Part shown: positions 620 through 19,746 of the stretch, piece after piece
Layout of the letters: every line of letters begins with the position of its first letter
Position numbering within the stretch: the first letter of the stretch is position 1
Sequence record: MH383160.1
Length of the DNA: 64,000 nucleotides
Direction: 5' to 3' (one strand)
Program-made: the position numbers and the translations under genes
Notes under the pieces: model-generated
Told to the model about the DNA's origin: nothing
Seen by the model: only the letters and a program-made list of their open reading frames with translations
Database searches by the model: none

Positions 620-1024
620 TTAGATAACCTGGCGGCGTTTACTGTATACTGTTACACGATTACCCTTACGATCATGTCGGATCTCTTTCTGGTTGCGAAT
701 CAGTTCACTTGGACGCTTAAGGTTTGCCAGGTGATCCGCGTGAGTCCATGCGGTGTGGTTTACCTGTACTTTGATATCAGAATCAGCGATAAACTCATCT
801 TGTGCATCAAGTATTGACGCCAGTAAATCCGCTCGTTTTAGTTCTGCTGCTGTTAGTACTGGCTCCGGTGAATTCACAATATCAGAGATCTCTTTGAACT
901 GTACGGCCCAGCGTTGACCTTTCGGTGCATCTTTGCCCATGTCTTTAAATGTTTCGCCTTCCTCGCGTGCAACAATACGGGCAGCTTCACGGGTAGCGTA
1001 AAATTTAGTAATCATGGTATACAT
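620..1024 (-). CDS. Early hypothetical protein, paralogue of 12330-12596
   Basis: Shares FxATRExARIxARxxGxTFKDMG...G.RWAV and (I/K)HDRKGNRVTVYS blocks with 12330-12596. Confidence 0.8.
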   Translation of the reverse strand: MYTMITKFYATREAARIVAREEGETFKDMGKDAPKGQRWAVQFKEISDIVNSPEPVLTAAELKRADLLASILDAQDEFIADSDIKVQVNHTAWTHADHLANLKRPSELIRNQKEIRHDRKGNRVTVYSKRRQVI

Positions 1025-2086
1025 CCTATTAGTTAAGTTAGTACTACAAGTTAGAGTCTATTATAAAGTACTATCTGGGCAATGTCAAATAGTACTTTAA
1101 ATGGATTCTATTACATGTCTTTCTTACGTTTTACATCGTGGTAGCGAACTGTTATTTCTTTGTTGATCTCTTCCTCGATGCGGTGAATAACTTTTTCTTT
1201 CGGGTTGAAACCTATAACGGTTTCTTTAATGATCTCCAAGCCCGTGTATTCGCCTTGTGTACCGTAACCGTATGTAAAGGTTTCGTGTCCCAGGTCTTCC
1301 CAGCGGTCGCCAATTAACGCAGACACGTAGCAAGAGTGGTAAGTATTGCCGTGTGAATCAGTCCACCGATTAACATTAATGTCAAAGGAGGTTACAATTT
1401 TCAGTTCCACTTTCTGGGCAAGGATCATAGCCATTTTTATTTCTCTCTCTTTGTTAGGAGGGGAACCGTTTCCCCTCACTTGATGTAAACTATTATACAG
1501 TACTAAGATACTTTGTCAATACTTATTTTTTGGAAAGTTTACGCATTAATTCTACGCTTTCTTGTGAACGTTTTGCTACCTGGCAAGCTGTATGGGTAGT
1601 AAACATTTTTGTATAGTCTGACGCTTTGCCACCGAACCGAGCGGCACGTTCACGGGCACTTGGAACTAATACTATTTCTTTCTTGCAGATAGTGCACTTA
1701 GCCATTTTTATTTCTCTCTTTTAGTTAGGAGGGGAACCATTCCCCTCGCTTGATGTAAACTATTATACAGTACTAAGATACTTTGTCAATACTTAATTAT
1801 TGTAAATGTCGTGAATAGTGATAAAGTTTTTACGACCGTAAACCTGCAAATCAGTATCAATAAAGTGCTTATCTAGTACATCCTCGACGCTTAACGCGGT
1901 GTCGTGGATATCTTCGTAGAATTGAGGATCTACAATCTTGCTTAAGTCATCCGGCGTTAACTTATCATTTAACCATTGAACCGCCTGGATATCTGCTTCA
2001 CGTTTCCAGTCTTCCAGGTTAGTAGTCAGTACTTGCTCGATTTCGTTAGCTGTCAGTAGAATCCGCATTTTTATGTTTCCTTATCA

Positions 2087-2260
2087 GTGGTTGATGTAAG
2101 TATTATACTCTTTTACTTTCTATTGTCAAACTATTTTATCAGGGGAGGTTTTCTTATGTCTTACTCCTGGACTACTTAACGGGGTTACTTGTTTCGTTCC
2201 CCGTCCTGATGTAAAACATTATACTTGATTCTAAGTACAATGCAAGTACTTTTTAAAAAT
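2087..2260 (-). repeat. ~175-bp dispersed repeat (copy 1): two tandem promoters flanking an ORF-less hairpin pair
   Basis: Aligns by eye with 12046-12225 (shared ttgtcaaactattttatcaggggag, ttactcctgg, ctacttaacgggg, ccccgtcctgatgtaaaacattatac). Confidence 0.85.
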
Positions 2261-3723
2261 AGTTTTCAGTACTAGCCACCAGCATATAATAGATACATTT
2301 ATGCACCCGGTGGGCTGAATTGTTTCTATGCGTATATAATAGCAAAGGGACTGACCGGAGTCAATCCCTTTTTCAAATATTTTTAAACTTCTTTCGGGTT
2401 GCGATATGTGATAGCGTTCGGGTACATTTGTTTAATGTTATTCCATGCCTGGTTAACATTGTAACCACTTGAGCGAATCAGTTGGTTACTACCGACACCT
2501 TGAAACACTACTTCGAATAAGAATTCTTTCATGCTTTCACCTCGCGATCTGCTTTACCTTTACGCCAGGACATTACTAATTGTTCGCGTTGCCATAAGTC
2601 GAGTGATACAAAAAGTTTTGCGGTATCACTTTTAGGATACTCTCCAGTAGTACCTAACCGATAAAACAGATCTTTCAGTACTGATAATTCTACTTGAATC
2701 ATTTTATTACTCCTGATTGCGTTAATACTTCTACAATTGCATGAATGATCATAAGTACAGCTAAAACAATAATCATCGGATTCATTTGCATAAGCTGTAC
2801 TCCTTCTATTAATCTTTCAGCCAATGATCTTGAATGAATTTTTCACAGAATCCCTGTTTCATGGATTCTAACAGGCGTTCGCGGTGAGCGGCGGCATATT
2901 GCTCAGTACTATGCGTTACGCCAGGCTGATAACGTGATACCCCATCCGGTCCGATGTATTGTACATCCCACGGTTTTTCGTTAGTATCAGACCATTTACG
3001 AACGATTAGTTGACCTTGCATTTTTCTTTCCTCTCAGTGGGGAGAATCATTTCTCCCCTTCATGTAAACTATTATACAGTACTGGGTTGCATTGTCAATA
3101 GTTTTTATTCACCTTGTTTGAATTTAGTTTTCTGCATTGATTCCATGATTGCAACCAATACGCCGTGGATCTCGCTTAACGCGGAATCACTAAAAGCATT
3201 AATGAATAGTCGATCATTCTCGCGAATATTTTTAATGTACTTTTCAGCAGTAGTTGCGAATTCATTCAACGGTAGATCAAATGCTTTATCCCATGATGGA
3301 TGGCGTAATTGTAACAGTACTGGATTATCACGATCACCAGGGGAAAACGTACCAGTGATGAAACATACGCCCGGAATACTTTCGAACTGGCAACGGACTT
3401 CCTTTGTGATAGTAGTATGAATGTACATTTATTGTTATCCTCTATTAAATTAATATTACAGTTTATGAATCAATTCTTTATCTAAGCGATAGCGTACATT
3501 ATTAATAGTAACGGCATTGTTTTTAATGCTACGCTGTACAGGTCCACCAGCAATAACAAATGTTGCTTTATTGCCCCGAACAATGATAGCACTTCCAGGA
3601 TTACCGAAATCATCTTGTACTAAAATACTTGATAAGTTTTCCATTTTTTATTTCCTCTTAGTAGGGGAAGATGTTTCCCCTTGATGCAAGTACTATAACA
3701 GTACTGAAAACTAAATGCAAGTA

Positions 3724-4080
3724 CTATGATAAAATCATGATAGGATATTCACTATCGATCAGTACCTCGAATCCGAAACCTTCGTACCATTCTTTAAGAT
3801 TAAAGGCGTTATCTTCTCCCGTATCGCATTCTAAAATGATACAATCTGAATCATCGGCGGCATCAATAAAGGCATTCATTAATTCGTTACCTTCACCATT
3901 GCCCCGACTATCAGGATCAACATAAAGAGAATCAATAAACGCTACACGGTCATAATCAAGATCCGGTGCAATGATTCCACGTTTAACAAACCAGTACTGC
4001 AATTGTGCTACTTTGCCCTGTACTTGATAGCCAGTGATCTCGCCATTGTCAGTAGTACGCGTGATATGTTGTATTCCCAT
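3724..4080 (-). CDS. GNAT-family acetyltransferase
   Basis: Acetyl-CoA motif A (FIDSLYVDPDSRGNGEGNELM) and motif B (NLKEWYEGFGF). Confidence 0.85.
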   Translation of the reverse strand: MGIQHITRTTDNGEITGYQVQGKVAQLQYWFVKRGIIAPDLDYDRVAFIDSLYVDPDSRGNGEGNELMNAFIDAADDSDCIILECDTGEDNAFNLKEWYEGFGFEVLIDSEYPIMILS

Positions 4081-4143
4081 GATTTCAATCCTCAGTTAAG
4101 ATATAAAATATTATAAACTATCTTTCAGTACTGTCAATACTTT

Positions 4144-4401
4144 TTATCTCATAGATCTATGCCAACAATTACGCGGATCTCTTTTAAAAGTACTATCATG
4201 ATCCTCCTGGCAAGTAATACAATACATGCACCCTATAACGGCCTGGCGTCGATTCTCAGGAATTTTATCGCCGCAGTCGAGGCAATGTACCAGTGATTCT
4301 CTTTGTGCGTTAATTTGCTTTCTAGCGTGGTTAACGGCGGCCTGAATCACTGCGTTAATCTCGTCTTGTTCGGCCCCATCTTTCGCGAATCCTACAGCCA
4401 T
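4144..4401 (-). CDS. TraR/DksA-family C4 zinc-finger protein (YbiI-like)
   Basis: N-terminal helix with acidic D..EQDE residues followed by CLDCGDKIPENRRQAVIGCMYCITCQE. Confidence 0.9.
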   Translation of the reverse strand: MAVGFAKDGAEQDEINAVIQAAVNHARKQINAQRESLVHCLDCGDKIPENRRQAVIGCMYCITCQEDHDSTFKRDPRNCWHRSMR

Positions 4402-4732
4402 TATTTTAACCTCATTATAAAAATACTATAGTACTGTAATGCGACAATAATATTACTTGTTCTTACTTTTTCCAATCCACATGATACCACATATTCATCC
4501 CCATATGTGCGGAACGATACACCATGAAAATTTTTATACACTTGCACTACTAATCATAACCTTTCGTCTAACCAACTGCATAGAATTATACTACTTTACG
4601 CAAATTGATCAAGTATTGATCAGATCATTTTTTGATCAATATTATACAGTTACATTTGTGCACCCTATGGGTTAGTGACGTTCTCGTCTTGATGTAAGTA
4701 TTATGCCAGTACTGGATGATATTGTCAATAGT

Positions 4733-7700
4733 TTATTTTAATTTTTTTCTGTCATTGATTAATGCTTTCAGTACTATACTAATGATTTGCAATGATTCAT
4801 CAATGACTATAAAATTATTTTCTTTCATTAGATGATAGTTACCATTGATTGTATATTCTAAGGAGTACTGTTTACGTTTAATTTTTGATAATGTTTCTAT
4901 TTGTTTTTGTACTGATTTCATGCTAATCATTGTTAAACGTCCTGTAACGCATTCTAACGAGATAAACGGTTGAGTACTGGCATTGTATAGGGTAATGAAT
5001 TAAAGCCCACCAGCGTTAACCAGTGGGCTATAATCTTACATCTTGCGGATAATCTTAACAGTATCTTTCACCGATTTACCGTCTTGCTGACATTGCTCGA
5101 TCATTGCGTATTGTTCTGCGGTCAGATCCTCGCCAGTTTTTGCCAGTACTGCGTCGATGAATGAATCCAGTGCGATCATTTTGTTTCTCTCTTAGGTTAA
5201 GTTAACTACTGTTGATAAAACTTATTATACAGTACTATCAAACTATGTCAATAACTTTAATAGTACTGGTAATATATTTTAGCGGTAGTCGTCGTATGCT
5301 TTATTCACCTGGCGAATGTAACTTTCAAAGGCTTCGTCTACCGTTTCATACTCCCGAACATAATCACCATAGGAAACTACATACATACCTTTTTGATCTT
5401 CAAACGTCATGATGATAGAATCCAGACCAACGATTTCAGTTTTTGCGATGATAGCCATTTTTTAATTCCTTAGTAGTGTAGTTGATAAAACTTATTATGC
5501 CAGTACTATCAAACTATGTCAATAGCACTGTGATAATATTTTTAGTTAATAATAGTCAGTGTAAAATTGTAATCCCCTGCCTGGTATAGTACTTTATCGC
5601 CGAACGTGCCGACACGTTTCATATTGCAATAGATACCCATAACACTTTTTACATCTTTGATATTCCGAACGCCTGTAATATCTTTATTAAAATAATCGTG
5701 GTCAGAAAATAAAACTTGTTTTGCATTTTTCAGTACAGTGCGGATATTAGCCATTTTGTTTTCTCTCTGTTAGTGGGGAGAACTATTCTCCCCTTGATGT
5801 AAACTATTATACAGTACTATAATCTATTGTCAAACTATTTTTTTATATTATTCGAAATCTTCTGGACCGGACTGATAATCATCTTCACCGTATGCACTTT
5901 CTAACCGCTCACCAGTGTAATCATCAGTTAAGCTATCATCCTCATAGTTCACGTCTACGCCTGTGATGTAAAACTGGCTATCGTCTGGATCATTGAAATT
6001 AATTTTTTGGATGTTTACAATAACTGTATTGATGCCCAGGACACCGCCATCAGCCGTTACAAAGTACTGATAGTTTTCACAACCGCCTGAATTGAAACCG
6101 TAATTAATTTCGGCCCGACCATCATTTAAACGCAGTGCCTGGGCAATGATTTCATTTTCAAAGTTAGATTGAGCAATTGAGATAGTCATGATTCGTTTCC
6201 TTATTACCAGGGGAAACCGTTTCCCCTTGCGATGTAAAACATTATACGCTTATTGAGATAGTTTGCAAGTACTTTTTAAAAATAGTTTTCAGTACTCAAA
6301 CATTATACAATAGATACACTCCTGCACCCTGTGGGCTAGTGAGCTATCTCTCAATGAATATATAATAGCAAACTGGCTGACCGAAGTCAACCACTTTTTC
6401 ATTTATTTTTAGCTTTTAGAATCGCCGCCTTTCGCGTCATGCCTTGCTTGATGTACTCATTTACTTTCGCTTTTTTAGCGTTTACCTTGTCTGCTTTCGT
6501 TTTAGGAGTACTGTAAATTATACCGTTAGGATTCATTTAAATCACCATAAAGAATAGATAGGTTACTAACAATGCCGCGATCATTGCACCGACCAGGGCC
6601 GAACTGTAATAAGCTAATGATTTCATTTTTTAGCCTGAAAATAATGTTTAATTTGAGCGGCGGTCAGTGCACAATTACGCAGGAAGTTTTCTGTATAACT
6701 GCGTCGAGTACTGAAAGAAAATTGACCTTTACCGTTCCCGATAGTAACATCAAACCGAGCATTATATTGTTTCATTTTGTTTCTCCTGTTCTTGGGGAGA
6801 ATCATTTCTCCCCTTCATGTAAACTATTATACAGTACTAAAAACTAATTGCAAGTATTATTTTTTAGATTTACGTAAACTTTCTACCATCTCAGGAGTAA
6901 GCCCCAGCGGGTAGGAAACCACTTCATCCACAAAACGCAAAGGGAATACCCCATCTAAAGTTGAACGTGCTTTCTTATTAGTACTCTTTTTTGATGCTTT
7001 CATTTCATATTCCTTAATTAGTGGGGAGAACTATTTCTCCACTTCATGTAAACTATTATACAGTACTAAAAACTAATTGCAAGTATTATTTTCTAAAAAA
7101 TGTTTGTATGCTGAATCAACCACTCTTTCGATAACATACGCTAACGGCACGTATCCAACTACATGACTACAATAAAAAGGACTACGATTAGAATCATCGT
7201 ATGCAAATACTTTTTCAGGATCTGCATCAATCACATACATATTAACCTTTAAGATGTCGATCTTATCCTGTACAGTAAGCATATTAATTAACCTTTTAAG
7301 TACTGGCTTAAGTAGTCTTTTTGATCTTCGGTGATTGCAGTCATCTTCCCTAGTACTGGGTTGATGATATAATCCCCTGTAACGTCCTGTGACGCATTCT
7401 CAGGGTGTTTAACGGCTGGGGTAGCCATAGCCATTGCCTGGACTTGTTCGACGCTGTAACGCTCATAAAGGCGGCATTCTTCCGGTGTTAACATAGCATC
7501 AGTACGCTTCATCGGTTTAATGATGCTTTCGATCTCATTCAGTACTTGATTAACGTTCATGGTATAATCCCCAATATAAGCGGCCTAAAACGACCGCTAA
7601 CGATGTTTTGATTAATAGGTGTAAGGTTGACGCTCAAACAATGATTGCACGTTGTACGCCCCGCTAATGGGCTTTGCTGGCAAATCGATTTTATATTGTT

Positions 7701-8417
7701 CACGCTTAAAGATAATAAAACGGCAATTGTTTTTAACATCAAAATTGATTGAACGTTCCAGGAGTTTTCCATCGTGCACAAATACAAGATAACCGCTTGG
7801 TACTTGTTTTGTAGTACTGGTTGCAACCATAGACCGACGAACATGAGTACCTGCATCGATTAAAGTACTGATATTTTTCATTTTAGTTTCCTTAGTTGTC
7901 TTGATAAAATCTATTATGCCAGTACTATCAAACTATGTCAATAGTACTGTGATAATATTTTTACTTACTTTTTGCTTTCTTAATTGCTTCCACCTGGTCG
8001 GCCCATTCTTTACCCCATACTTGTAAATTATAATGGTACTGGCAAAGAGCAACGCCCCGCTTTAAACCAGTAATAGATTTTTTACCACATTGACAAGTTT
8101 TCATATTAGTTTCCTTGTAGTGGGGAGAATCATTTCTCCCCTTGATGTAATGTATTATACTTTATTCGATTTACTTTGCAAGTACTTTTTTAATTTAATT
8201 CATCCAGGCAAAGGATACGCTCAACGCCCAAATCAGTTAAACTAATGGTCGGCACTTGATAGGTTTCAATGTATGCTACAGTTGCCCACTGACCGAACTC
8301 ATTAACGGCCCAGGTATTCATTGCATTTTGCAATTCCGCACCTGCCTTGTTAGTAATGACTGCAACTACTTGTTCGTTGCCAGTAGTACCAGATACGCGA
8401 GTAATGATAATAGCCAT
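4733..8417 (-). other. Cluster of small early hypothetical CDSs: 4733-4930, 5036-5179 (47 aa, not in ORF track), 5542-5754, 7073-7282, 7288-7560, 7612-7881, 8190-8417
   Basis: ORFs with RBS, most behind a cassette promoter; 5036-5179 translated by hand (MIALDSFIDAVLAKTGEDL...). Confidence 0.7.
5848..6189 (-). CDS. Acidic early protein
   Basis: 113 aa with a strongly D/E-rich C-terminal half (DVNYEDDSLTDDYTGERLESAYGEDD...EDFE); own promoter and RBS. Confidence 0.75.
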   Translation of the reverse strand: MTISIAQSNFENEIIAQALRLNDGRAEINYGFNSGGCENYQYFVTADGGVLGINTVIVNIQKINFNDPDDSQFYITGVDVNYEDDSLTDDYTGERLESAYGEDDYQSGPEDFE

Positions 8418-8654
8418 TGTTTTGATTCCTTTGATTTGGAAGGAGAACCGTTTTCCCCTCTCGATGTAAAACATTATACGCTAATCTATTAATCATGCAA
8501 GTACTTTTTATTACTTTTTGCAAAATACTTTAAACGCTCTCAATCGCATTCTAACGACCTTAACGCCACCAGCTAGGGCGATGTATCAGATAATCAGTTT
8601 AATGCGTTAGAATCGATTATAGGCGGTGCTAGTGGACTGGAATACTATAGACAC

Positions 8655-8692
8655 AAAAAAGCCCACTGTTTAAGGTGGGCTATTGATTCAGT
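8655..8692 (-). terminator. Intrinsic terminator, near-identical copy at 9391-9420
   Basis: AAAAAAGCCCAC-tgtttaag-GTGGGCT hairpin with U-tract on the minus strand, downstream of 8703-9185 and 9435-9734. Confidence 0.8.
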
Positions 8693-8702
8693 ACTTTAAT
8701 TG

Positions 8703-9185
8703 TTATGCTTCAACTTTGCGATGAGCTTCGATCCATTCCTCGCGAGTCATACCGCTTTCTTTGATAGCGTCCAGTACTACCGCAATGCAGTTACCGCGTA
8801 CAGGAATCAAATGTTCTTCACCGTTATCAAGTACTACAGTAACACGTTCTTGAATCCATTTTTTAGGTTTAGATTCTGGCTTATCTTCACCATACTTAAC
8901 CGCCAGGGCTTTATGTGCCATTTCTACAACTACTTCCAGATCCAATCCAGACACTGCCGCCTGGATACTGTCAATTGTTGCTTGCAGTTCGGCTTCACGG
9001 GCTTTTTTCTGTTCTTCCAGTTCTGCTACCTTTTTGGCTTGTAATTCTTTCGCTTCACTGTACGCAATGTTAAAATTGTTGCGTACTGCTTTCATGGTAT
9101 CGTTATCCAGGTCAGCCAGCAATTCAGCAGCAATAACAGTATCGTTTGAAATCAGTGCTTTCAGGAATGATTTTACATTAGCCAT
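8703..9185 (-). CDS. H-NS/StpA-like nucleoid protein with a divergent DNA-binding loop
   Basis: N-terminal coiled coil (ELQAKKVAELEEQKKAREAELQ), basic linker, and a C-terminal domain VLDNGEEHLIPVRGNCIAVVLDAIKESGMTREEW that aligns by eye with the H-NS C-terminal domain. Confidence 0.6.
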   Translation of the reverse strand: MANVKSFLKALISNDTVIAAELLADLDNDTMKAVRNNFNIAYSEAKELQAKKVAELEEQKKAREAELQATIDSIQAAVSGLDLEVVVEMAHKALAVKYGEDKPESKPKKWIQERVTVVLDNGEEHLIPVRGNCIAVVLDAIKESGMTREEWIEAHRKVEA

Positions 9186-9434
9186 TTTATAAATCCTCAA
9201 TTAAAGTTTAGTTTACGTTTATTAGTGTATCAAAGTTTTTTTGACGTGTCCAGTTTTTCGTTCGACTTACTGGCGGTCTACTTAGTGCTCCCCGTCTTGA
9301 TGTAATACATTCTACGCCTTTTTGCGGTATTGTCAACTACTTTTTTAAAACTATTTTCAAAGTATCTCAGTACTACAATACTACAAAAATAAAAAAGCCC
9401 ACTGTTTAAGGTGGGCTAGTGATTCAGTACTATA

Positions 9435-9734
9435 TTATAAACAGTTAATTACTCCGGTGTGCGTTACTTTCTCAGTATCCATAACCGTGACCGATCCACG
9501 CTTAGTACTTGCATCATAATAAATTGTTGTGCTACCGTTTTCGTCTTCTTCATGGAACGGGCCGTTTTTAAATGCTTCTGGTTGGATCTCTAAATCCTTT
9601 AAAACAATCTCGCCCGTACTTTCATTGGTCATCGCAACAGTGCACTGAATGAATTTTTCACTACTCACATCTAACGACGCATTAACAGCGAAAGAGGAAA
9701 CAGATAAAGCCAGGGCGATGATTGCAATTTTCAT
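9435..9734 (-). CDS. Exported protein with signal peptide and a terminal Cys pair
   Basis: MKIAIIALALSVSSFAVNA signal peptide; Cys near the mature N-terminus and at the C-terminus. Confidence 0.75.
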   Translation of the reverse strand: MKIAIIALALSVSSFAVNASLDVSSEKFIQCTVAMTNESTGEIVLKDLEIQPEAFKNGPFHEEDENGSTTIYYDASTKRGSVTVMDTEKVTHTGVINCL

Positions 9735-12045
9735 TTGATTATCCTTAGTTACTAGGGGGAACCTCTCCCCCGTGCTATGTAAAATATTATACAGTACTAA
9801 AAACTAATTGCAAGTACTTTATGATTTTTTATAAAACATTTCGGCAGTGATATTTTTACCCGTTGGTTGTACTTTATCCAGAATTTTTTGATGCCCAGGC
9901 CGTCCAAATGAATATGATCCGTAAACCGTAAACCAGTAGTTACCCTCAGTGTTTACATGTACAGCACAATAGGGAACGCCCCGCGATTCATCACTAGTAA
10001 AGTGTGCTACCGTTCCCGTTACATTCGAAGTCGTTGATTTGATTTGTTCAAGCATTTTCTTATTCCTTAGTTACCAGGGGAACCGCTCCCCCTATGCAAA
10101 ACATTATACGCGTTTAAAAACTAATAGCAAGTATTTTAATAAAAAGTATTTGAAAAATAATTGTTGACAACTGCATCCAGTACTGGCATAATACTTATAT
10201 AAAGACGATACAGTCACTAACCCACAGGGTGCCGAGATCCGTCTATTAAATGATTCAGTACTGAAAAAGTAACGGGGAGTTATTATCTCCCCGCGTTGTT
10301 ATTTGGTAAGGTATAAACAGAAGTCACCTTTATTTGCTACGCCGCCAGTGTAACGCGATGAATAGTTAGAAATATCTTGTACTTCTGCTATTACCAGTGT
10401 ATCATCATTCATTTCGTCGCAGAAGCAAACGGCTGGATCTTTAACGCCGATATTGTCGGCATGTTCCCGCATAGATTTAACCAGTGCTTCCAGTTGAGAA
10501 AGAGTAGTGATATTAGCCATTGTATTTTCCTCATTACCAGGGAGAACCATTTCTCCCCTCTATGTAAAACATTATACAGTACTAAAAACTAATTGCAAGT
10601 ACTTTTTAATTAAATTCCATAAAATCATTCTCAACGTGCACAACAATCTGATTATTTTTAAAGTCCGCAGAAAACTCAATACAATCATATACTGCTTTTT
10701 CTGTTACCATACTATGAGTACCAATCGGATTAATAGGGGATTGAATTGTTTCAATCTCGTTACCTTGTTCATTAACAATTAAAATATTAAACATAACTTT
10801 TACTCCTGATAGTGTTTACCTGATATAAAGTATTATACGCCTTTATTGCTTAGTGTCCAGTACTTTTTAAAACATAATCAAAGACACTTCTCACATCATT
10901 GATCATCGCCTGGCGGTTAGCAGGTAAAGCATCAGGATCACCACTATCCCAAGCCTGTATGAAGCCTCCAAGCTCTGAATAAACTTTATTACGCAATCCG
11001 ATTAACTGTAATTCTTTTTCTTCAAGCTCTTTGATACGTTCAATTAAATCACTCATTAGATAATCCTTAGTACTTAACTGTAAGATCCGCAACGGTCGCA
11101 GTAGTGCCCGTCTTCCTCGTCATCGTCAACGAATTGCCCGACGAAATGATCTACTTTCGCTTTCAGGTTATTATAATCGTTTTCTACTTCCTTTAATCGT
11201 TCCTGGTAGTATTCCAGTGCCTCAAGATACGCCGCCTCAGCAGTTTTTGCACGCATAGCTAAATTCATGCCACGCGATTCATCATAAAGCCAATAACCAT
11301 CAGTGCACTGGCTAATAGATAATGACTTGCTTAATACTGTATAGCTAATTACTTTGCTCATTAGATATTCCTCAGTAAAGGCGGGAACCATTCCCCGCCA
11401 TTATCTCAGTACTAAATTAATATGCGATTGATTCTACTACGCCATCAATAACATTGAATTGATACTCGTTACCCTCGATCAGTGCCGTGATGTTCTCAGT
11501 AGTGAATTGATCCTCATATGCATTCTCTAAATCACGGTACAACTTGCGGGATAATTCACGAATAGTTTCAGTGAGTAGTTCCTCAAGCTCATTAACTAAC
11601 GTTTCTTGTTTTGCGGTTAAATCAGTGTAAGCCGATTCAATGTACCCGCTTACAGTATTCTCATGCGAGTAGTGGGAGTGAGAACGCTTTACACTCATCG
11701 GCAAATCATCTTCATTCAGCAGGTGACGGATTGAGCGATACTTAGTTAATGCTCTTACCTTGCGTAAAAACTTCACTGCGTCAACGTGGTCAGTACTGAT
11801 TGATGCACCGTCACCTTGCGACCAAAAACCACTGAATCGTAAATCTGCGTCATTAATGCCATATTCCGGTAGTACTGTTTCTTTATAGTATTCAATTTCA
11901 CTTTCAGAAAAATAATCATCGTTTAAGTTTTTTTCACGTTCCCGAACCAGTTCGATAGCTGACGTTTGTTGTTCTGCGTTCAATTCAGAAAAAGCCATAA
12001 CATAAGTAGTAGTAGTGATAGTTTTCATTTTGTAACCCTCATTCA

Positions 12046-12225
12046 GTAGTTGATGTAAGTATTATACGCTTTTAAAAACAATTGTCAAACTATTTTATCA
12101 GGGGAGTTTTTCGTGTGCCTTACTCCTGGGCTACTTAACGGGGAGTTACTTATTTCGTCCCCCGTCCTGATGTAAAACATTATACGCCTTTAAACATAGT
12201 TTGCAAGTACTTTTTGAAAAATAGT
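12046..12225 (-). repeat. ~175-bp dispersed repeat (copy 2)
   Basis: See 2087-2260. Confidence 0.85.
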
Positions 12226-12329
12226 TTTTAATCACTTTTATATAGATACACTCCCGCACCCTATGGGCTATCGCCTTGTGTCCGGCTTGTAAGTATTATC
12301 TCACTAAGCCGGATAATGGTCAAGTACTT

Positions 12330-12596
12330 TTATTCAAGTACTGCTATCTTTTTAGTACTGTACACAGTAACACGGTTGCCCTTGCGGTCGTGCTTTATTT
12401 CTACCACTCGACGCGATACACTATCAGGACTTTTTAACGCCGATAACCAGTACTGTAAGGATCTGGCTGTACTTTGCTTTACTACCGCCCAACGTTTACC
12501 ACGTTCCGATTGCACGCCCATATCTTTAAACGTTGCCCCGTCCTGGCGAGCGGCGATCCGAGCTTGTTCACGCGTTGCAAAGTATATAATATTCAT
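12330..12596 (-). CDS. Early hypothetical protein, paralogue of 620-1024
   Basis: Start trimmed to MNIIYFATREQ; shared motifs with 620-1024. Confidence 0.75.
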   Translation of the reverse strand: MNIIYFATREQARIAARQDGATFKDMGVQSERGKRWAVVKQSTARSLQYWLSALKSPDSVSRRVVEIKHDRKGNRVTVYSTKKIAVLE

Positions 12597-14165
12597 GCTG
12601 TTATCCCATCGTTGATGTATGAATAAAATCCTATTATAAAGTACTATCACCGTGCAATAGTACTTTAAATAAATTCTATTACATTCCAACCATTGCAGCA
12701 CGGATCGCCGTAGTGCTATATTTGAATCCGTCCGGCGTTTTATCTTGTCCAGTCTGTTCTAAAAATAGCATCATATGACGGGCCGCATCATTGCGATTAG
12801 TGTTAGCGGCAATAAAGTCCTGGGCCAACCGGTATAATGATTCATCGTTATTAATCCAAAGGCTTACATTCCATTGAGTTTTGTTAGCGTGACCTAAGAA
12901 CATTTTTGATTTAGCCATTTTTAAATCCTCGTTTGATTTGAGGCGGGAATAGTTCCCGCTCTCGATGTAAAGTATTATACGCTATTTGTTAGTACTGTCA
13001 AACTACTTTTTAAAACTTATTCGTAAATCTTGCCACTGTCAGCCCATACCAGGAAACGAGGCATATTATCCCATGCATCTTGTTTTAAATTTAAACCGTG
13101 TAATACTTCTGTACTTTCCATTCCTGGTACTGGTTTACTATACACCGCGAACAATTCACCCATATACTGATAAGCCATCGTTAAATCACTTGCGATCATC
13201 TTATGGATCATCGCATCAAGCATCACGGTAGCGGCGTATTGTTCACGCTTAAGCGGTAACATTGCAATAAGTTCCCGATAAGCTGAAATGTGAATTTTTA
13301 CCGTTTCTGCCGGAAGATCTTTCATCTCGTCGCGGAAGTTAACCAGGTTAGCAATAATTTTATTGATTTGAGTAGCCATCGTTTTAATCTCTCTTAAAGT
13401 GTAGCGGGAAGTGTTCCCGCTCTCGATGTAAAACATTCTACACCTTTCCCAATACTTTGCAAGTACTTTCTACAAATACTTTTAAAATAGTTTTCTTTCT
13501 ATATAGGAGTACTATCATTCAGTACTGCTACACTAGAATCAATCAACCAAATCACTACTATACCCCATAAAACGGCCTCAGACGCATTCTAACGCATTAA
13601 TACACCTAAGCTATACATTTGCACCGCCACCAGCTAACCAGGGCTTTACGATGCGTTTAAACGCGTTAAATTATTTTCAATTATTTTGTTTTTTGCTATT
13701 GACTCAGTACTAAAAAAGCGTATAATTACTACATAGACGCGAGAAAGCGGATATCCCAAGGGGTGCGGAATTGTGCCCAAAATTCAAGATATAAAAAAAA
13801 GGATACACTCCCGCACCCTAGCAGGTCAAAGCACTTTCTCAGTACTGAATCATAGTACCATAGTACGCCCCAGGATGGCAAGCAAATTAATTAAAACTTT
13901 TTTCATCCAGGGTATTGCTTTATTTTTCCAGTACTGTATAATAGTTTCATCAAGTCGAGAAAGACTATAGCCCACCGGGTGCATAGTTACGCCCAAAATT
14001 TCAGTACTAGATTATTTTTTAAAAATATTCATCCAGGCGGTTGACATTGCCCCCAGTTTATTAGATAATGATTCCAGATTCAGAAAAATCTAACTCCAGA
14101 TACTGCGGGGAAACTATCCCCACGCGGTAGGGGAACTATTGGAAAAAAACAAAATAAAATTTTGA

Positions 14166-14295
14166 TTTAGCCGTCTATACTTCCAGACGTGTAACCATCT
14201 AGCCGTTTAGCCGTCCAAACGTCTAGCCATACAGCCATCCAGAAATCTAGCCGTTTAGCCGTCTAGATAGATAGCCATCTTTACTTCCAGACTTC
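14166..14295. repeat. Iteron-like array: 8 x AGCC(G/A)T, a 19-bp direct repeat and an 11-bp direct repeat
   Basis: AGCCRT at 14169, 14201, 14209, 14225, 14233, 14249, 14257, 14273; ATCTAGCCGTTTAGCCGTC at 14197 and 14245; TACTTCCAGAC at 14178 and 14282. Confidence 0.9.
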
Positions 14296-14389
14296 TGGAG
14301 GGCTAGACATATCTACGTCCAAAATCCATCCAGGGTAACTACGCCCAAAATCCGTCAGTACTATACCATAGATCTATCTTTTGAAAGGG

Positions 14390-14463
14390 AGTATTCAGTA
14401 CTGCCACAATAGCCCTCACTGTTACTGTAGGAGGATGAAGACTATCATGTAGTACTGAATACT
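14390..14463. repeat. Perfect 13-bp inverted repeat
   Basis: AGTATTCAGTACT (14390-14402) and AGTACTGAATACT (14451-14463). Confidence 0.85.
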
Positions 14464-15345
14464 GTTAGAGGGAACCCACCAGCTTGTGCTGGTGGCATAA
14501 TGCTTTAGATTAAAATCAGTACTAATACCATTCTGTTAATATCAGTACTGTTATTACGATTTTCATATGAGGTTCAAAAAGATGTACCACCACAGGAGGA
14601 ACTATCTTTTCTGTACTGTCTCACGACAGGAGGTAGAGTAAATGAATTGTTCGCAGCAACTCATCTCTCTATGTAGAACATTATACAGTACTGAATCATA
14701 ATGTCAATAGCTTTCTTTCATTATTCAGTACTGATATTCTTGAGAACTACCCGACTACAAACATCATTATATCCCACAAATCATAAACGTCCCAACGTAA
14801 ATTTCAACTTTCGAAGATCCAACTTTTATTTCATAGGTACTCCAAAATTTTTAGGATCGAGATTTAGGATGGAGTACTAACCAACTTTTTGCTGGAGCCT
14901 CAAGGGGTAATGGAATTTTACCCCGAAGGGTAAAGGGGTAATTGAAATTAAGGTGAAAGTAATAATTCAGTACTAATCATTGCGTGATTACTTTTGATTA
15001 CATTTGATGTAATTTGAAAAATGGAAAAGGAGCTTGGAAACTACAAAGTACGGCAGACTTCCTCTGCCTACTTAGTGGCATATTAGTACTGAATCATTCA
15101 CACACATTTCCGTGCATTCTTGAGCAATCTTGTCTATACTAATCAGTACTGAATCATATATAATCATTCTGTGATTCTACGGTGCTCATATAAATGTTTA
15201 TATATGATTACTTATGACTACCTATGATTACGGGGTTTAGCCTGGGGAGAATCCTAGTGATCGCATTTGTCCAGGCTGAATTTTAACAATTCGCCTGTAC
15301 ATAAAGGTTGTTCACTAGGAGCTTCCCCTGTCTACTTGTGTTTAA

Positions 15346-17468
15346 TTACTTCCTATATATAAGCATTAAGATATAGTAGTACTGATTGTACTGTACATTC
15401 TCTTTAATATTATAAGGGTCTATAGCAATCTCGGTACATCTGTTAAATGCATATCTATTAAATGCCAGTGGAATTATAGATCTAATCCATACTTGTTCAT
15501 TTTCTTTTAGTTTACTTATATAGAAGTTTTTATACTCTTTATGCATAGTATTATGTCTATTAATATGATAGTACTAGTGTTAGTACTGAGCACAATTTTT
15601 CTTTATAGTTCTTAGGGTATATAGAATCTTTTATGCACTCATTGAAGTGCCATAGGTATAATCTTGGGTCGCATTCTTTATATATTCTTACGGGGACGAA
15701 TGTTAGTTTTCTTATATAGAATTCTTTATGTTCTTTATTCATATTAGTACCTGAATATAAGTAGGATTATGTTATAGTACTGGTTAGTACTGCAATGATT
15801 CTCTATACATCGATTAACAGTTATGGAATAGCTATATCTGGCGTAAGCATTATCCAGCGGGATTTTACATTGAGCACTTAGAGAAAGTACAGTAGGTAGT
15901 GTATTCAAATAGAAGTCTTTGTAATTATTCATACAGGAATAGTATACCTATGATGCCGGAGTACAGGTTAGTACTGTTACCATCTTCATTTGCGTTTAAA
16001 GTCATTTGAATACAATTATTGTAGCATACTCTGCCGAAATATGTATTAGTACTTAAAGGTGGTGTAGTCCTTAGAAACATTTGTTCTGAGGGGCTTATGT
16101 ATTTGGAGTAGAATTCTTTATGTTCTTTATTCATATTAGTTAGTGTCTGTATATAAGTAATAGTAAGAATACGTACTGCACATCTTCATCTTTAGTATTG
16201 AGTACTGTACGTATTGCGTCATGGAACAAGAATATAGTACTTGGGTCATGAAAATTTAAAGGGGTTCTGGGTACGGCACATTTGTAGTTCCCTTTAACAA
16301 ATTGTGTGTAGTATTCTCTATGCATATTAGTACCTATATATTAGGGCGAGAATGTAGTACAATTCATATGGAATGTAATTTGGGGTGATCGCACACTGTG
16401 TATGGTAAATGAATTGTTCGGTATTTTTCTTATCCTTGATATCTATTGGGATTTGTGGTATAAGCATTTGGGAGTTTAGATCGAGATGGCTTAAGTAGAA
16501 TTCTTTATGCATATTGTTCTCTTAGAATACGAAAGCTAGGTACAGGGTATGATACAGTACTCGATGATAGCTGTCAAAATCTAGTATACATGCTTTAGTA
16601 CACATAGTAAAATACACTTTATCATTTTGTGCATTGATACCGCGAGGTTTATCTAATAGATTAGTTCTGAGGTACATTGGGAAATATTTTGTGTAGTATT
16701 CTTTATGCATGTTAGTACCTGAATATAAGTAGGATAGTGTTATATAGCTGGTCATAACTACTACTATTTTCTATACTTCGTTCTATGCAGTTATTGAATC
16801 CAAGTACTGCCAAATCGTTATCCAGAGGGACTTTATATCTGGCGTAGTGTTCAAAAATGCTGGGGAGAAATTGTTTGTAGTATTCTTTGTGCATATTGTT
16901 CTCTTTAGTACTTGAATATTAGGGCGAGGATGTAATACAGTTTATATGTTCTATCCTCGTACATTAGGGTGTACTTAGTACATTCTTGGAACATTGTTTT
17001 TGCGTCATCTTTTATGCCCAATGTAACGTTTGGTATAAGGCTTTGTAGATACATTGGGAGTTTCTCTATGTAGTATTCTTTATAGTTGTTCATATTATGT
17101 GTTATTTCGTGAAAACAAGGGTTAGTACTGCATAGTACAAGTCATACGTATCTTTAGGGTTAATAGCACCTTTAATACATTCTTTCATTAATTCATTATA
17201 GATAATTTTAGTACTGAAGGTATTGGATGTTACTATATCGGAATTAAGGTACGACAAGTAGAATTCTTTATGTTTGTGCATATTAGTACTTATATATTAG
17301 TAAAAGGATGTGATACAGTACTCGATTATAGTCTTCAATATATATCGAGGATTTAGTGCACTGAATGAAGTAGTCTTTTTCGTAGTTTTTTTCTATACCC
17401 AATGGTTCTGTTGGTAGAAGGTGTTGGAGATACATTGGGAGTTTCTCTATGTAGTATTCTTTATGCAT
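15346..17468 (-). other. Tandem array A1: 11 paralogous ~59-69 aa CDSs (15346-15546, 15560-15742, 15744-15932, 15925-16134, 16140-16325, 16327-16512, 16522-16710, 16712-16894, 16905-17093, 17102-17281, 17283-17468)
   Basis: Shared N-terminal M(H/N)xx(K)E(F/Y)Y and C-terminal Yx(I/V)LxL(I/V)(F/Y)xY; tight TAA-T-ATG coupling. 17102-17281 translated by hand. Confidence 0.85.
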
Positions 17469-18126
17469 AGTTTGTAATATACGTAATGAGGTGATGCATT
17501 TTCTTATTAGTACTGATAATTTCCTGTACATGTTTTGTCAGATTGTACGCGTTTTTATAGAGTACTGGATTATCGATTACAGTACTGTACATGAATAGTT
17601 CTTCTTCCTGTAGTTCTTTGTGTTCTAGTTCTTTGAGGAATTGCAGTACTGTATCAGTTTCGTCAGTAGGTTGTGCTTGCCAGAAGTGCATTTTCTCGTG
17701 TACTTTTTCTGATCCTACGTAGTATCCATCACCGATTTGGAATTGAGCACTACTGATATCATTTGGTGTATTACAATTCACGAATAGGTATACGTTTCCA
17801 TAAGAGATATTCAAAACACACGGGATACCATTTAACTGTATAGTTAAGCCGAAATATACGTTTTTTATATTTTTAGTACTAGTATTAGTACTCAATACTT
17901 TTAAATCAGTATTATAGATATTCGCATAATCAATAGAGATATTATTTTTCTTCAAGTACGATTTGAGGTTCTTAGATACGAGAACTGTACTGAATTTATC
18001 CTTTTTATTTCGTTTCTTTAGTACATTAGGGTGATAAGTATATGAAGATGTAACTGATTCTGCTTGAATACTGTTGAGGTACTTAAAGTGCTTAAGGTAT
18101 TGTTTACTGTGTGCATTAAGTTTCAT
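17461..18126 (-). CDS. Hypothetical protein (221 aa) interrupting the small-ORF array
   Basis: ORF with AAGGA RBS; unrelated to its neighbours. Confidence 0.75.
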   Translation of the reverse strand: MKLNAHSKQYLKHFKYLNSIQAESVTSSYTYHPNVLKKRNKKDKFSTVLVSKNLKSYLKKNNISIDYANIYNTDLKVLSTNTSTKNIKNVYFGLTIQLNGIPCVLNISYGNVYLFVNCNTPNDISSAQFQIGDGYYVGSEKVHEKMHFWQAQPTDETDTVLQFLKELEHKELQEEELFMYSTVIDNPVLYKNAYNLTKHVQEIISTNKKMHHLITYITNYA

Positions 18127-18136
18127 TTGGTTTCCT

Positions 18137-19746
18137 TTATATAGATGCCAGGGCGAGGATTTCCCTGTAGGGATTATCTTGTGTTAGTACAGAATAAATG
18201 CAGCTATTGAGATTAATATTTTTAGTACTTTTTGTTCCTAGTTTGTAGTAATCAACGAATGTGTCGTACATGAAACGGTCTTTTATGGTTATACGTTCTA
18301 TATAGAATTGTTGCATAGTATTCCTTATATAGAGATTAGTTTCATTACTTCTCTGTATGTGTACTTTTCGTTTTGTGCATCTCTTGTGACGACATATAGG
18401 AAGGTGTGTTTATCTTTTTTGTTCCCGCAATTGTAGAAAATATTGAACTTATTGAAGTTGAATCTTTCGGCGTGTTGTAGTTTAGTTAAATAGAATTCTA
18501 TGTTCATTTTATTCCTTACATTTCAATAAGTTTAAGTACTGCTCGGTACGTGTACTTAGTTGTCAGTGCTTCTTTAATAGAAACACAGAAGTAATGTTTT
18601 TTGTCTCTTATACTGCCGCGTTTGTAGTACCACACATGGGAGTTGTGACTGTACTTGTCTCTGTCGGATAGTTGTTGGTAGTAGTAGCTTATATGATTCA
18701 TTATAATGTAATTAGCCTTACTATATTAAAGTACTCGGTTCCTGGTGTACCTTGTAGTATATTACGCACGACATTTTTTTGGTGCTGGATGATTGCTGAA
18801 GGTGCGGTTCTTTTTAGTTTTTTTAAAGTACTGAATTCTTGTTTAAGTATGAACTGTACATCTTTAGGGAGAATATCTATGTAGTACTGATGAATGTTTG
18901 TAGTTTTCATATAGCACCTTTTAGAACTTAAAGATGAGGTTCAGGATAGAGCGGTACTTAGTTTCAGGGAACTGATGTTCTATTGCATAACGTGTCGCCA
19001 TCCTGAAATCGTAATTGTAATATAGATTATCCTTTCTCATAGGTGGTGCTAAAGAGAATGATAGCTGGTCTTGCTTGTGTAGTTTACTACCATAGAAATC
19101 TTTATGATTATTCATAGAAGTAGATTAGTCCTATTAAACCTGAGTACATAATATTTTTGTTATTGCATTCGATTGCTTCTAGAGTACTACGTATACAATT
19201 ATTAAAGCAATCTCTACCGAATTGAGTATTGGTACTTACAGGTGATACACTCCTTAGAAACAATTGTTCTTCGTTGCTAAGGTATTTGGTGTAGAATTCT
19301 TTATGTTCAGTATTCATATTAGTACTCGATTAATAGGGTAAGGATGTAATAGTATTGCATACATTCTACCCCTTGTAAAGCATTTCTTATGTTATTATTC
19401 CTGTACGAGTTCAGGAGTTTAGGGCTACGTTTGAGGTGTTTGAAATTAGTTTGTGTATGCAGTAGGCTTTCACGTAGACCTTTTGTTGGTAGTGCATCGA
19501 TGTAGTACTGTTCGATATTCATATAGATAGCAGTACTAAGATTTTTGATAATTGTTTATTGCTATCCCCGCAGATGTTGCTGTGTAAAATACTCACAATG
19601 AGGGTATCAATTGCATTGTTCATCATAAGGGTGCATCCTGGACTATTATAATTTTTTAGCTCAATTAGCCACGAACTATCCGAGAGAAATTCCCCGTACT
19701 CTAGTTCATTTAGAGTATTGAGGTAGTACTTAAGAGTATTTGTCAT
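18137..19746 (-). other. Tandem array A2: 8 related small CDSs (18137-18316, 18325-18507, 18516-18701, 18701-18910, 18921-19115, 19108-19317, 19319-19522, 19519-19746)
   Basis: Same N-terminal (F/Y)Y motif and hydrophobic C-terminal helix; 19108-19317 is a clear paralogue of 15925-16134. 18137-18316 translated by hand. Confidence 0.8.

What the first reader, a model, noticed from the sequence alone, without database searches (positions are those of the whole stretch)
13437..15345. 1.9-kb non-coding hub with iterons, inverted repeats and a symmetry axis
Seen: 8 AGCC(G/A)T units with a 48-bp-period 19-mer (14166-14295), a 13-bp inverted repeat (14390/14451), the Chi palindrome (14476-14495), GGGGTAA x3 plus one inverted copy (about 14904-14941), and recurring CATCCAGG and GCCCAAAAT motifs. 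It separates the early cassette region from the paralogue arrays. Established: T7-like termini carry short tandem heptamer arrays, and some jumbo enterobacterial phages have long direct terminal repeats. Inference: terminal-repeat boundary, terminase site or origin.
Basis: partly seen in the sequence, partly recalled or inferred. Interest (0 to 1): 0.65.

Follow-up and report, generated by a model that had tools for sequence, protein, structure and literature searches.

The report
Jumbo phage terminal-repeat end region
This 1.9-kb gene-free stretch holds one physical end of a giant E. coli phage genome, the inner edge of its 19.7-kb terminal repeat, packed with signals for cutting the DNA, starting early transcription and resisting the host nuclease RecBCD.

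Summary
The window is Escherichia phage UB (Asteriusvirus, 121Q/PBECO4-like jumbo phage).

Four relatives with mapped ends (fEgEco12, G17, vB_Ec-M-J, CRJP21) start or stop at the base matching window 15072. So 13437-15072 is the last 1.6 kb of a 19.7-kb direct terminal repeat (DTR), and 15073-15345 is unique DNA.

The cut lies at the foot of a hairpin, in a site (GACTTC-N11-cut-TAGYGG) conserved in four of the five genera examined. All eight DTR boundaries examined have TAG just outside the repeat, so the two boundaries of one repeat are inverted copies of each other. This fits staggered nicks followed by fill-in duplication of the repeat.

The region also holds:
- phased TGATTAC repeats on both sides of the cut;
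- near-consensus sigma-70 promoters;
- a Chi palindrome, the only Chi guarding this end, while nine Chi in the repeat face the other end;
- an 8-bp-period array also found near the ends of unrelated terminal-repeat phages.

The terminal-repeat boundary reading is supported. An origin is neither supported nor excluded. The closest analogue is the untranslated Repeat Region 3 of phage T5. No reads for UB could be obtained.

The parts
13437..15072 (.). Gene-free leader: the last 1,636 bp of the 19,710-bp direct terminal repeat (record MH383160.1 193,510-213,219)
   Evidence: Ends of G17 and fEgEco12 map to window 15072 and to L008:4511. No ORF exceeds 65 aa. Identity across 9 Asteriusviruses is mostly 0.85-0.97 (lowest 25-bp bins 0.66-0.8).
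15045..15083 (.). End-forming site. Imperfect 11-bp hairpin at 15045-15073, GACTTC at 15056-15061, cut between 15072 and 15073, then TAGTGGCATAT on the unique side.
   Evidence: Identical first bases in fEgEco12, vB_Ec-M-J, CRJP21 and G17. DNA fold -8.7 kcal/mol, z = -2.8. The motif is conserved in Muenster, XbC2 and BF. The pattern occurs once in the 353-kb record, at this place.
14985..15017 (+). TGATTAC repeats at 10-bp phase, 55-87 bp inside the cut
   Evidence: TRF period 10, 3.3 copies. All five TGAYTAC hits in window 13000-16000 fall in the two repeat arrays flanking the cut. Conservation 0.84-0.91.
15203..15231 (+). Second TGAYTAC array at 10-bp phase, 131-159 bp outside the cut, in unique DNA
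   Evidence: TRF period 10, 2.9 copies. Conservation is 0.88-0.92, although the 100 bp between it and the cut are only 0.45-0.65 conserved.
15073..15345 (.). Unique-side flank of the boundary, 273 bp up to the first paralogue gene. Contains AGTACTGAATCAT copies at 15085 and 15145.
   Evidence: The same AGTACTGAAT copies follow the cut in Muenster, as a run of three at 10-bp spacing, and one follows it in Kae01.
14904..14941 (.). GGGGTAA cluster: two exact, one imperfect and one inverted copy. Copy number varies among relatives.
14680..14707 (-). Perfect sigma-70 consensus promoter (TTGACA, 16-nt spacer ending in AGTACTG, TATAAT), 366-393 bp from the end and pointing into the repeat
   Evidence: The -10 block 14679-14695 is invariant in 9 genomes.
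14766..14807 (-). Two overlapping weaker inward promoter-like sites (10 of 12 matches each)
14476..14495 (.). Chi palindrome: reverse-complement Chi at 14476-14483, 4-nt loop, Chi at 14488-14495. The plus-strand Chi is the only one in the repeat that RecBCD entering at the 15072 end would recognise.
   Evidence: fold -9.6 kcal/mol, z = -3.3. The loop reads TTGT or ACAA in different relatives while the stem is kept. The same palindrome lies 484-503 bp from the end in Munch and Kae01.
14390..14463 (.). 13-bp inverted repeat built on AGTACT (14390-14402 and 14451-14463)
14164..14331 (+). 8-bp-period array, unit about TCTAGCCR, roughly 20 units (core 14168-14266), preceded by an A/T-rich stretch at 14137-14165
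   Evidence: Similar arrays are at 680-840 bp from the record start in BF, pEa12 and XbC2, at 43-114 bp in PGT2 and at 486-602 bp in Vibrio phage Pontus.
13699..14069 (+). Three outward-facing promoter units: TTGACT/16/TATAAT at 13699-13726; TTGCTT/16/TATAAT at 13915-13942; TTGACA/17/GATAAT at 14041-14069. Each is followed by GAGAAAG-type, GCCCAAAAT and CATCCAGG boxes.
   Evidence: The -10 blocks and an upstream A/T-rich block (13654-13688) are invariant in 9 genomes. A 146-bp block is shared with Klebsiella phage Muenster.
13435..13462 (-). Promoter-like site (TTGCAA/16/TAGAAT, preceded by AGTAC) for the first repeat gene, 13436-13017
   Evidence: The block 13458-13496 is invariant.

Best explanation
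The interval is the non-coding control region at one end of the phage's long direct terminal repeat (DTR). Virion DNA ends at window 15072.

**Shown by comparison**
- The end position.
- A cut-site motif conserved in four of the five genera examined.
- The same TAG flank, in inverted orientation, at both boundaries of the repeat.
- A repeat dense in near-consensus sigma-70-like promoter sites, 31 of 38 reading away from this region, and dense in Chi sites.

**Inferred mechanism**
1. In replicating concatemers the packaging nuclease is positioned by the 10-bp-phased TGATTAC repeats on both sides of the site. It cuts or nicks next to the hairpin, after CTA on the strand that reads into the repeat.
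2. The same event on the opposite strand at the far boundary, 19.7 kb away, leaves 3' ends that a polymerase extends through the repeat. Each daughter genome therefore receives a full copy.
3. After infection, host RNA polymerase starts at the consensus promoter 366-393 bp from the end and at about 30 further promoters, transcribing the small early genes inward.
4. RecBCD entering at this end meets the correctly oriented Chi 577 bp in. RecBCD entering at the other end meets nine Chi. This limits degradation and loads RecA for repeat-to-repeat recombination, giving circles, concatemers or recombination-primed replication.

The roles of the 8-bp array and of the three outward promoters are not resolved.
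For: **Identity of the window.** The finding's interval (window 13437-15345) is 100% identical to MH383160.1, an Asteriusvirus.

**End position.** fEgEco12 base 1 and the last base of G17 both map to window 15072. G17 base 1 and the last base of fEgEco12 both map to record 193,510. vB_Ec-M-J and CRJP21 start at the same base. fEgEco12 ends were set by PhageTerm and confirmed by restriction digests (PMC13070987). G17 ends were set by coverage (PMC6563267).

**Same layout in other genera.** Five other genera or groups start their records with a 1.3-1.8-kb (almost) gene-free leader followed by small genes reading inward. Two of them carry PhageTerm-annotated repeats of 20,030 and 19,736 bp.

**Boundary motif.** Six boundaries in three genera read inside|TAG. 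The prediction then held for XbC2 and BF.

**Structures and repeats.** The cut lies at the foot of a hairpin, with phased repeats on both sides of it.

**Promoters.** In window 1-15072 there are 31 minus-strand against 7 plus-strand sites with at least 10 of 12 matches, 12 of them perfect. Density falls to about 2-3 per 5 kb from the boundary to about 40 kb.

**Chi.**
- 10 of the 25 Chi in the genome lie in the repeat, which is 5.6% of the DNA. A reversed-pattern control gives 3 in the whole genome.
- Strand counts in the repeat are 9:1 in UB, 12:2 in Kae01 and 7:1 in Muenster, against 0-2 per strand in the adjacent 25-49 kb.
- The orientation rule is as stated in PMC12315714.

**Conservation.** The leader is as conserved as the flanking genes, and conservation drops just past the cut.
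Against: - No sequencing reads of UB itself could be examined. The UB record holds one collapsed copy of the repeat, so the end is inferred from 92-97% identical relatives.
- Depositors may have copied each other's start points, although three records cite their own PhageTerm runs.
- Promoters are consensus matches only.
- The near ends of the five genera are homologous, so the TAG rule rests on fewer independent events than eight.
- Kae01 lacks GACTTC.
- Muenster has no Chi near this end.
- Chi excess could partly reflect oligonucleotide bias or hitch-hiking in repeated intergenic modules.
- Nick polarity and any role of the phased repeats in terminase binding are untested.
Confidence: 0.75

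Rival explanations
1. Injection-stop or two-step DNA-transfer signal, as proposed for T5 Repeat Region 3. The far end of the repeat would enter first, the early genes would be expressed, and entry would pause at this repeat-rich region until early proteins release it. This is not exclusive of the end-forming role.
For: The placement matches T5: an untranslated 1.2-kb region, mostly in the terminal repeat and overrunning 270 bp into unique DNA, full of direct repeats, inverted repeats and palindromes. Here the figures are 1.6 kb and 273 bp. T5-like Vibrio and Aeromonas phages share the 8-bp array. Most Chi face the far end, the end that would be exposed first.
Against: There are no DnaA boxes here or in the related leaders, although they define the T5 model. 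There is no sequence match to T5 itself. Genes run colinearly from this end inward for more than 45 kb in relatives, which fits entry from this end as in T7. The repeat genes next to the region that were scanned have no known function, so no A1/A2-like pair can be named. There are no injection data for this clade.
Confidence: 0.2
2. Replication origin. Transcription from the three outward promoters would open the A/T-rich stretch and the repeat array, by R-loop or iteron-type initiation.
For: Three conserved promoters face an A/T-rich stretch (14137-14165) and a tandem array. Cumulative GC skew has its minimum near 15000. T4-type phages use promoter-dependent R-loop origins (established knowledge).
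Against: Units are 8 bp, not 17-22-bp iterons. The same array lies 43-114 bp from the end of a 42.7-kb T7-type phage and about 30-150 bp from the end of a 63.5-kb contig. There are no DnaA boxes. No initiator gene is recognisable nearby. The skew turn occurs without a change of gene strand and tracks a block of paralogues with a C-rich coding strand.
Confidence: 0.15
3. The region encodes unannotated small proteins or small RNAs, and the repeats are incidental.
For: Several related records annotate 5-8 hypothetical proteins under the match. Strong promoters and two AGGAGG boxes are present.
Against: No ORF exceeds 65 aa. The 65-aa ORF (13773-13970) and the 19-aa ORF after AGGAGG are broken by 1-nt or 8-nt indels or lose their start codon in relatives. 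There is no Rfam or tRNA match. The one long-range stem examined is broken by one-sided changes. Short transcripts from the promoters remain possible.
Confidence: 0.1

Closest known systems
Phage T5 Repeat Region 3 (untranslated end of the left terminal repeat; candidate injection stop signal)
   Same: A long terminal repeat carrying host-takeover genes. A 1-2-kb untranslated block of direct repeats, inverted repeats and palindromes sits at the repeat boundary and overruns about 270 bp into unique DNA. Repeated boxes lie on both sides of the boundary.
   Different: There is no sequence similarity to T5 and there are no DnaA boxes. The repeat units differ (AGTACT-based boxes, TGATTAC and the 8-bp array, against the T5 DRD box). 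A Chi palindrome is present. Two-step transfer is unknown for this clade.
Phage T7 left end (terminal repeat, short repeat arrays, A1-A3 host promoters)
   Same: Strong host-polymerase promoters lie within a few hundred bp of the end and point inward. Genes are colinear from that end. Short tandem arrays sit next to the terminus, and a related T7-type phage (PGT2) carries the same 8-bp array. A hairpin lies next to the end-forming site.
   Different: The repeat is 19.7 kb rather than 160 bp and carries dozens of small early-type genes. The virion is a myovirus with T4-like core genes. Extra outward-facing promoters are present.
Terminally clustered, oriented Chi sites of P1 and of LLS-type lambdoid phages
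   Same: Chi is far above expectation, is concentrated near the packaged ends and shows a strong orientation bias.
   Different: Here the cluster fills a fixed direct terminal repeat of a virulent jumbo phage, and a back-to-back Chi palindrome marks the switch of polarity. Dependence on RecBCD has not been tested.
SPP1-type pac site (phased small-terminase binding boxes flanking the cut)
   Same: Heptamer boxes at 10-bp phase lie on both sides of a defined cut.
   Different: SPP1 packages by headful from one pac cut. Here both ends are fixed. Protein binding has not been tested. This comparison rests on my own knowledge of SPP1, not on a tool result.

Membership tests
Direct-terminal-repeat end of Rak2-like / Asteriusvirus jumbo phages | Sequence corresponds to termini mapped in close relatives | tested here: met
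   Four records begin or end at the base equal to window 15072. Both boundaries map consistently. The methods are given.
Direct-terminal-repeat end of Rak2-like / Asteriusvirus jumbo phages | Doubled read depth over the repeat and read-start pile-ups at its two boundaries in virion DNA of this phage | not testable with these tools
Direct-terminal-repeat end of Rak2-like / Asteriusvirus jumbo phages | Gene-free leader followed by small early genes reading inward | tested here: met
   Muenster, Kae01, Munch, BF, pEa12 and XbC2 all show a 1.3-1.8-kb leader.
T5 injection stop region (Repeat Region 3) | Untranslated repeat-rich block at the inner boundary of the terminal repeat, overrunning into unique DNA | tested here: met
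   1,636 bp inside plus 273 bp outside, against T5's 1.2 kb with a 270-bp overrun.
T5 injection stop region (Repeat Region 3) | Paired DnaA boxes in inverted-repeat modules | tested here: not met
   No TTWTNCACA on either strand in the UB leader or in five related leaders.
T5 injection stop region (Repeat Region 3) | Two-step DNA transfer that halts here | not testable with these tools
   Needs interrupted-infection experiments.
Iteron-type or R-loop replication origin | Iterons of about 17-22 bp with an adjacent initiator gene, or DnaA boxes next to an A/T-rich unwinding element | tested here: not met
   Units are 8 bp. There are no DnaA boxes. Neighbouring genes have unknown function. An A/T-rich stretch and promoters are present.
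Iteron-type or R-loop replication origin | Copy-number peak or autonomous replication | not testable with these tools
   Needs marker-frequency or plasmid assays.
Chi-guarded phage ends (P1, LLS class) | Chi over-represented, clustered at the ends and oriented to be read by RecBCD entering from the end | tested here: met
   Chi density in the repeat is 11 times that of the rest of the genome. Strand counts are 9:1, 12:2 and 7:1 in three genera. The nearest correctly oriented Chi is 577 bp from this end and 1,361 bp from the far end.
Chi-guarded phage ends (P1, LLS class) | Growth or recombination depends on RecBCD and Chi | not testable with these tools
   Needs rec mutant hosts and Chi mutants.
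Terminase recognition (pac-type) site | Conserved sequence at the cut, with phased binding boxes | tested here: met
   GACTTC-N11-cut-TAGYGG, or a close variant, occurs in four of five genera. TGAYTAC boxes at 10-bp phase lie on both sides.
Terminase recognition (pac-type) site | Binding and cleavage by the phage terminase | not testable with these tools
   Needs biochemistry or packaging assays.

The most novel reading that the evidence does not exclude
Long terminal repeats in the Rak2-like jumbo phages are made by one strand-specific nicking activity. It acts after CTA at two sites placed as inverted copies 20 kb apart, and the whole repeat is then copied by strand displacement. The repeat would also be a Chi-armoured early-gene cassette whose polarity flips at the Chi palindrome. 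The 8-bp array shared with T5-like and T7-like phages would be a cross-family end element, for packaging, ejection or binding of a host protein, that has not been described.
Probability: 0.3. Interest if true: 0.7.

Novelty: new member of a known kind. Interest (0 to 1): 0.5.

Why it matters
- **Better annotation.** Most of the roughly 40 Asteriusvirus records found here are deposited permuted, with this stretch blank or filled with doubtful small ORFs. The comparison fixes both ends of the UB genome and gives a short motif for finding ends in related jumbo phages.
- **A testable model for long repeats.** How 10-20-kb terminal repeats are duplicated is still poorly understood. The inverted CTA/TAG flanks, the hairpin at the cut and the phased repeats give a concrete model that can be tested.
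- **A link to RecBCD.** The Chi-dense, polarised repeat suggests how a virulent jumbo phage with exposed ends copes with, or exploits, RecBCD. This connects it to recent work on Chi-rich lambdoid phages.
- **Practical use.** Knowing the packaging and end signals helps in engineering these phages and in judging genome completeness.

Tried and rejected
- **Reads.** No whole genome is held for the window.
- **RNA genes.** Rfam at permissive E-values and ARAGORN found nothing.
- **Hidden genes.** Candidate ORFs are not conserved in frame.
- **Long-range stem.** The stem at 13759-13818 in the first outward unit has one-sided changes in A4 and fEgEco12, so I dropped it.
- **DnaA boxes.** None.
- **IHF and SlmA.** I compared the IHF consensus and the SlmA site (recalled from memory; its core contains AGTACT) by eye. 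The flanking positions do not fit, so I dropped both.
- **GC skew as an origin signal.** Rejected, because the turn occurs without a change of gene strand.
- **Uniqueness of the cut-site pattern.** It occurs once in UB, but reversed-pattern controls also give 0-1 per genome. Only its position is informative, not its rarity.
- **Neighbouring proteins.** Pfam and PHROGs scans gave only families of unknown function.
- **Literature.** A search for the octamer sequence found nothing relevant.
- **Not used or not met.** The large protein searches, structure tools and complex prediction were not used, because the finding is non-coding.
Full report
**Identity of the window.** The flagged interval is 100% identical to Escherichia phage UB, MH383160.1. 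This is an Asteriusvirus, a 353-kb jumbo myovirus of the 121Q/PBECO4 type. Window 13437 equals record 211,584. Forty-two phage records match at 80% identity or more. Most leave the stretch unannotated, and some place 5-8 hypothetical proteins on it.

**The observation.**
- The AGCC(G/A)T units are part of an array with a strict 8-bp period. Identity at lags 8, 16, 24 and 32 is 0.57-0.61 against about 0.2 elsewhere, and TRF finds period 8 with 12.4 copies.
- The region has no ORF above 65 aa, no tRNA and no Rfam match.
- The small ORFs that exist are broken by indels or lose their start codon in relatives.

**What it is.** Published relatives carry direct terminal repeats (DTRs) of about 20 kb:
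- fEgEco12, 20,993 bp by PhageTerm, confirmed by restriction digests;
- G17, about 20 kb by read depth;
- phage CBB, 22,456 bp by doubled depth and pulsed-field gels.

Base 1 of fEgEco12 and the last base of G17 both align to window 15072. vB_Ec-M-J, which has an annotated repeat, and CRJP21 begin with the same bases. The opposite ends of G17 and fEgEco12 both align to record 193,510.

By homology, the UB repeat is therefore record 193,510-213,219, which is 19,710 bp. It reaches from about 4.6 kb left of the window to window 15072. The flagged interval is the last 1,636 bp of the repeat plus the first 273 bp of unique DNA.

**The same layout in other genera.** Records of Klebsiella phages Muenster and fENko-Kae01 (Kae01), Salmonella phage Munch, Serratia phage BF, Erwinia phage pEa_SNUABM_12 and Xanthomonas phage XbC2 all start with 1.3-1.8 kb that is gene-free (one doubtful 46-aa ORF is annotated in Kae01), followed by small genes reading inward. 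In Muenster and Kae01 the start is annotated as a PhageTerm-defined repeat of 20,030 and 19,736 bp.

**The cut site.**
- In UB the end lies at the foot of an imperfect 11-bp hairpin (15045-15073; -8.7 kcal/mol, z = -2.8).
- I wrote each boundary as inside|outside on the strand that reads outward. All six boundaries of UB, Muenster and Kae01 then have TAG as the first three outside bases, and five have CT just inside.
- I predicted the same for XbC2 and BF and fetched the ends of their unit-length records. Both read ...GATA|TAGYGG.
- At this end, four of five genera share GACTT(C/T) 11 nt inside the cut (GACTTC in UB, XbC2 and BF). All five have TAGYGG just outside, followed 5-9 nt later by AGTACTG.
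- The two boundaries of one repeat carry the motif in inverted orientation, so on one strand the repeat is bracketed as ...CTA^[repeat]^TAG...

This is what the classical model for terminal repeats expects. Nicks on opposite strands at the two boundaries leave 3' ends that are extended through the repeat, so that both daughters receive a copy. The symmetry is shown. The nicking mechanism and its polarity are inferred.

TGAYTAC boxes at 10-bp phase lie 55-87 bp inside and 131-159 bp outside the cut. They occur nowhere else within 1.5 kb, and not at the far boundary. This suggests that this boundary is where the packaging enzyme is positioned. That too is an inference.

**Conservation.** Across nine Asteriusviruses the leader is mostly 0.85-0.97 identical per 25-bp bin (a few bins fall to 0.66-0.8), no less than the flanking genes. 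Identity falls to 0.45-0.65, with indels, in the 100 bp just outside the cut, then recovers over the outer TGAYTAC array. Invariant blocks include the -10 regions of the predicted promoters.

**Promoters.**
- The repeat portion of the window holds 31 minus-strand and 7 plus-strand sigma-70-type sites with at least 10 of 12 matches. Twelve are perfect.
- Density falls to about 2-3 per 5 kb from the boundary to about 40 kb.
- The promoter nearest the end is a perfect consensus at 14707-14680, 366-393 bp from the end and pointing inward.
- Many have AGTACTG directly before TATAAT.
- Three conserved promoter units at 13699-14069 point the other way, toward the 8-bp array and the end. Their role is open.

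**Chi.**
- The palindrome at 14476-14495 is the E. coli Chi octamer and its complement, separated by four bases.
- Relatives keep the stem while the loop reads TTGT or ACAA. The same palindrome lies 484-503 bp from the end in Munch and Kae01.
- Across the UB genome there are 25 Chi, against 3 for a reversed-pattern control. Ten lie in the repeat, an 11-fold excess in density.
- Nine of those ten are on the strand read by RecBCD entering from the far end, the nearest 1,361 bp in. The tenth, in the palindrome, is the only one read from the 15072 end, 577 bp in (orientation rule).
- Kae01 (12:2) and Muenster (7:1) show the same bias in their repeats, with almost no Chi in the next 25 kb.
- About half of the UB sites are in intergenic contexts.
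- Terminal, oriented Chi clusters are known for P1 and for LLS-type lambdoid phages. I found no description of them for this clade.

**The 8-bp array.** Its unit (about TCTAGCCR) and even a 19-nt core recur in several places:
- at the same distance from the end in Eneladusvirus and Mimasvirus;
- 43-114 bp from the end of the T7-type phage PGT2, at both ends of that record;
- in phiKT;
- in T5-like Vibrio and Aeromonas phages;
- about 30-150 bp from the end of a 63.5-kb metagenomic contig.

A literature search for the sequence found nothing. An element that sits next to the ends of unrelated terminal-repeat phages argues for a role tied to ends, not to a jumbo-phage origin. What that role is remains unknown.

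**Comparison with known systems.** The nearest analogue is T5 Repeat Region 3. It is 1.2 kb, untranslated, mostly within the terminal repeat with a 270-bp overrun into unique DNA, and crowded with repeats and palindromes. It has been proposed as the injection stop signal. The placement is the same here. The defining DnaA boxes are absent and there is no sequence similarity to T5 itself, so this is not a member of that family, though it may work in a related way. The T7 left end is a second analogue, with inward host promoters near the end, short arrays and colinear genes.

**Limits.** The end is inferred for UB from close relatives. No reads could be examined. Promoters, terminase binding, nick polarity, Chi function, the direction of DNA entry and any origin activity are untested.

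**Verdict.** The terminal-repeat-boundary reading is supported and can be placed to the base. The kind of element is known, while several details appear to be new: the inverted cut-site flanks, the Chi-dense polarised repeat with its palindrome, and the shared 8-bp array.

Noticed in passing
whole window; also L027 (Kae01 1-45 kb) and L028 (Muenster 1-45 kb): AGTACT occurs 260 times in 64 kb against 21 +/- 4 in shuffles, in coding and non-coding DNA alike. It is 12-fold over expectation, while the next palindromic hexamer reaches 2.3-fold. The same 12-14-fold excess is seen in two other genera. Only part of it is explained by promoter spacers (TTGACA-N9-AGTACTG-TATAAT) and -35 regions (AGTACTTGCAA).
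   Followed up: partly
whole window: Six palindromic hexamers are entirely absent (CCGCGG, CCCGGG, CCATGG, CAGCTG, AGGCCT, AGCGCT; expected 2-6 each). This looks like avoidance of restriction sites.
   Followed up: no
window 15346-19400: The tightly packed genes for about 60-aa paralogues are on the minus strand, yet plus-strand GC skew is strongly positive (0.16-0.24). Their coding strand is therefore C-rich, the opposite of the repeat genes next door. This, not replication, makes the cumulative-skew minimum at about 15000.
   Followed up: partly
L036:5000-5148 (IMG/VR contig of 63,557 bp); L006:1195-1290 (PGT2); L007:478-606 (Pontus): The 8-bp array, including the 19-nt core of the UB array, lies within about 30-600 bp of the ends of phages from unrelated families. 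In Pontus it is directly followed by three TTATCCACA DnaA boxes.
   Followed up: partly
window 14484-14487 and the same place in relatives: The 4-nt loop of the Chi palindrome is TTGT in UB and ph0011 but ACAA in 121Q, G17, fEgEco12 and UE-S1. The hairpin centre has therefore been inverted during evolution while the stem was kept.
   Followed up: no
window 13587-13602; L008:4645-4670; window about 8590: A box of the form TAACGCATTAA recurs at the gene-proximal edge of the leader, just inside the far boundary of the repeat, and beside another Chi site. Its function is unknown.
   Followed up: no
window 1-13000, minus strand: Early-type promoters fall into two spacer classes, ending in AGTACTG or in AAAGCG/AAGGCG directly before TATAAT. 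Many are followed by a conserved start region, AGTTTACATCAAGGG-like.
   Followed up: no
alignment of 13437-13640: The leader is mosaic. Variant blocks, such as a 30-40-bp insertion after 13520 and the presence or absence of the Chi at 13627, are shared in patterns that cut across overall similarity. This suggests frequent recombination among Asteriusviruses within the repeat.
   Followed up: no
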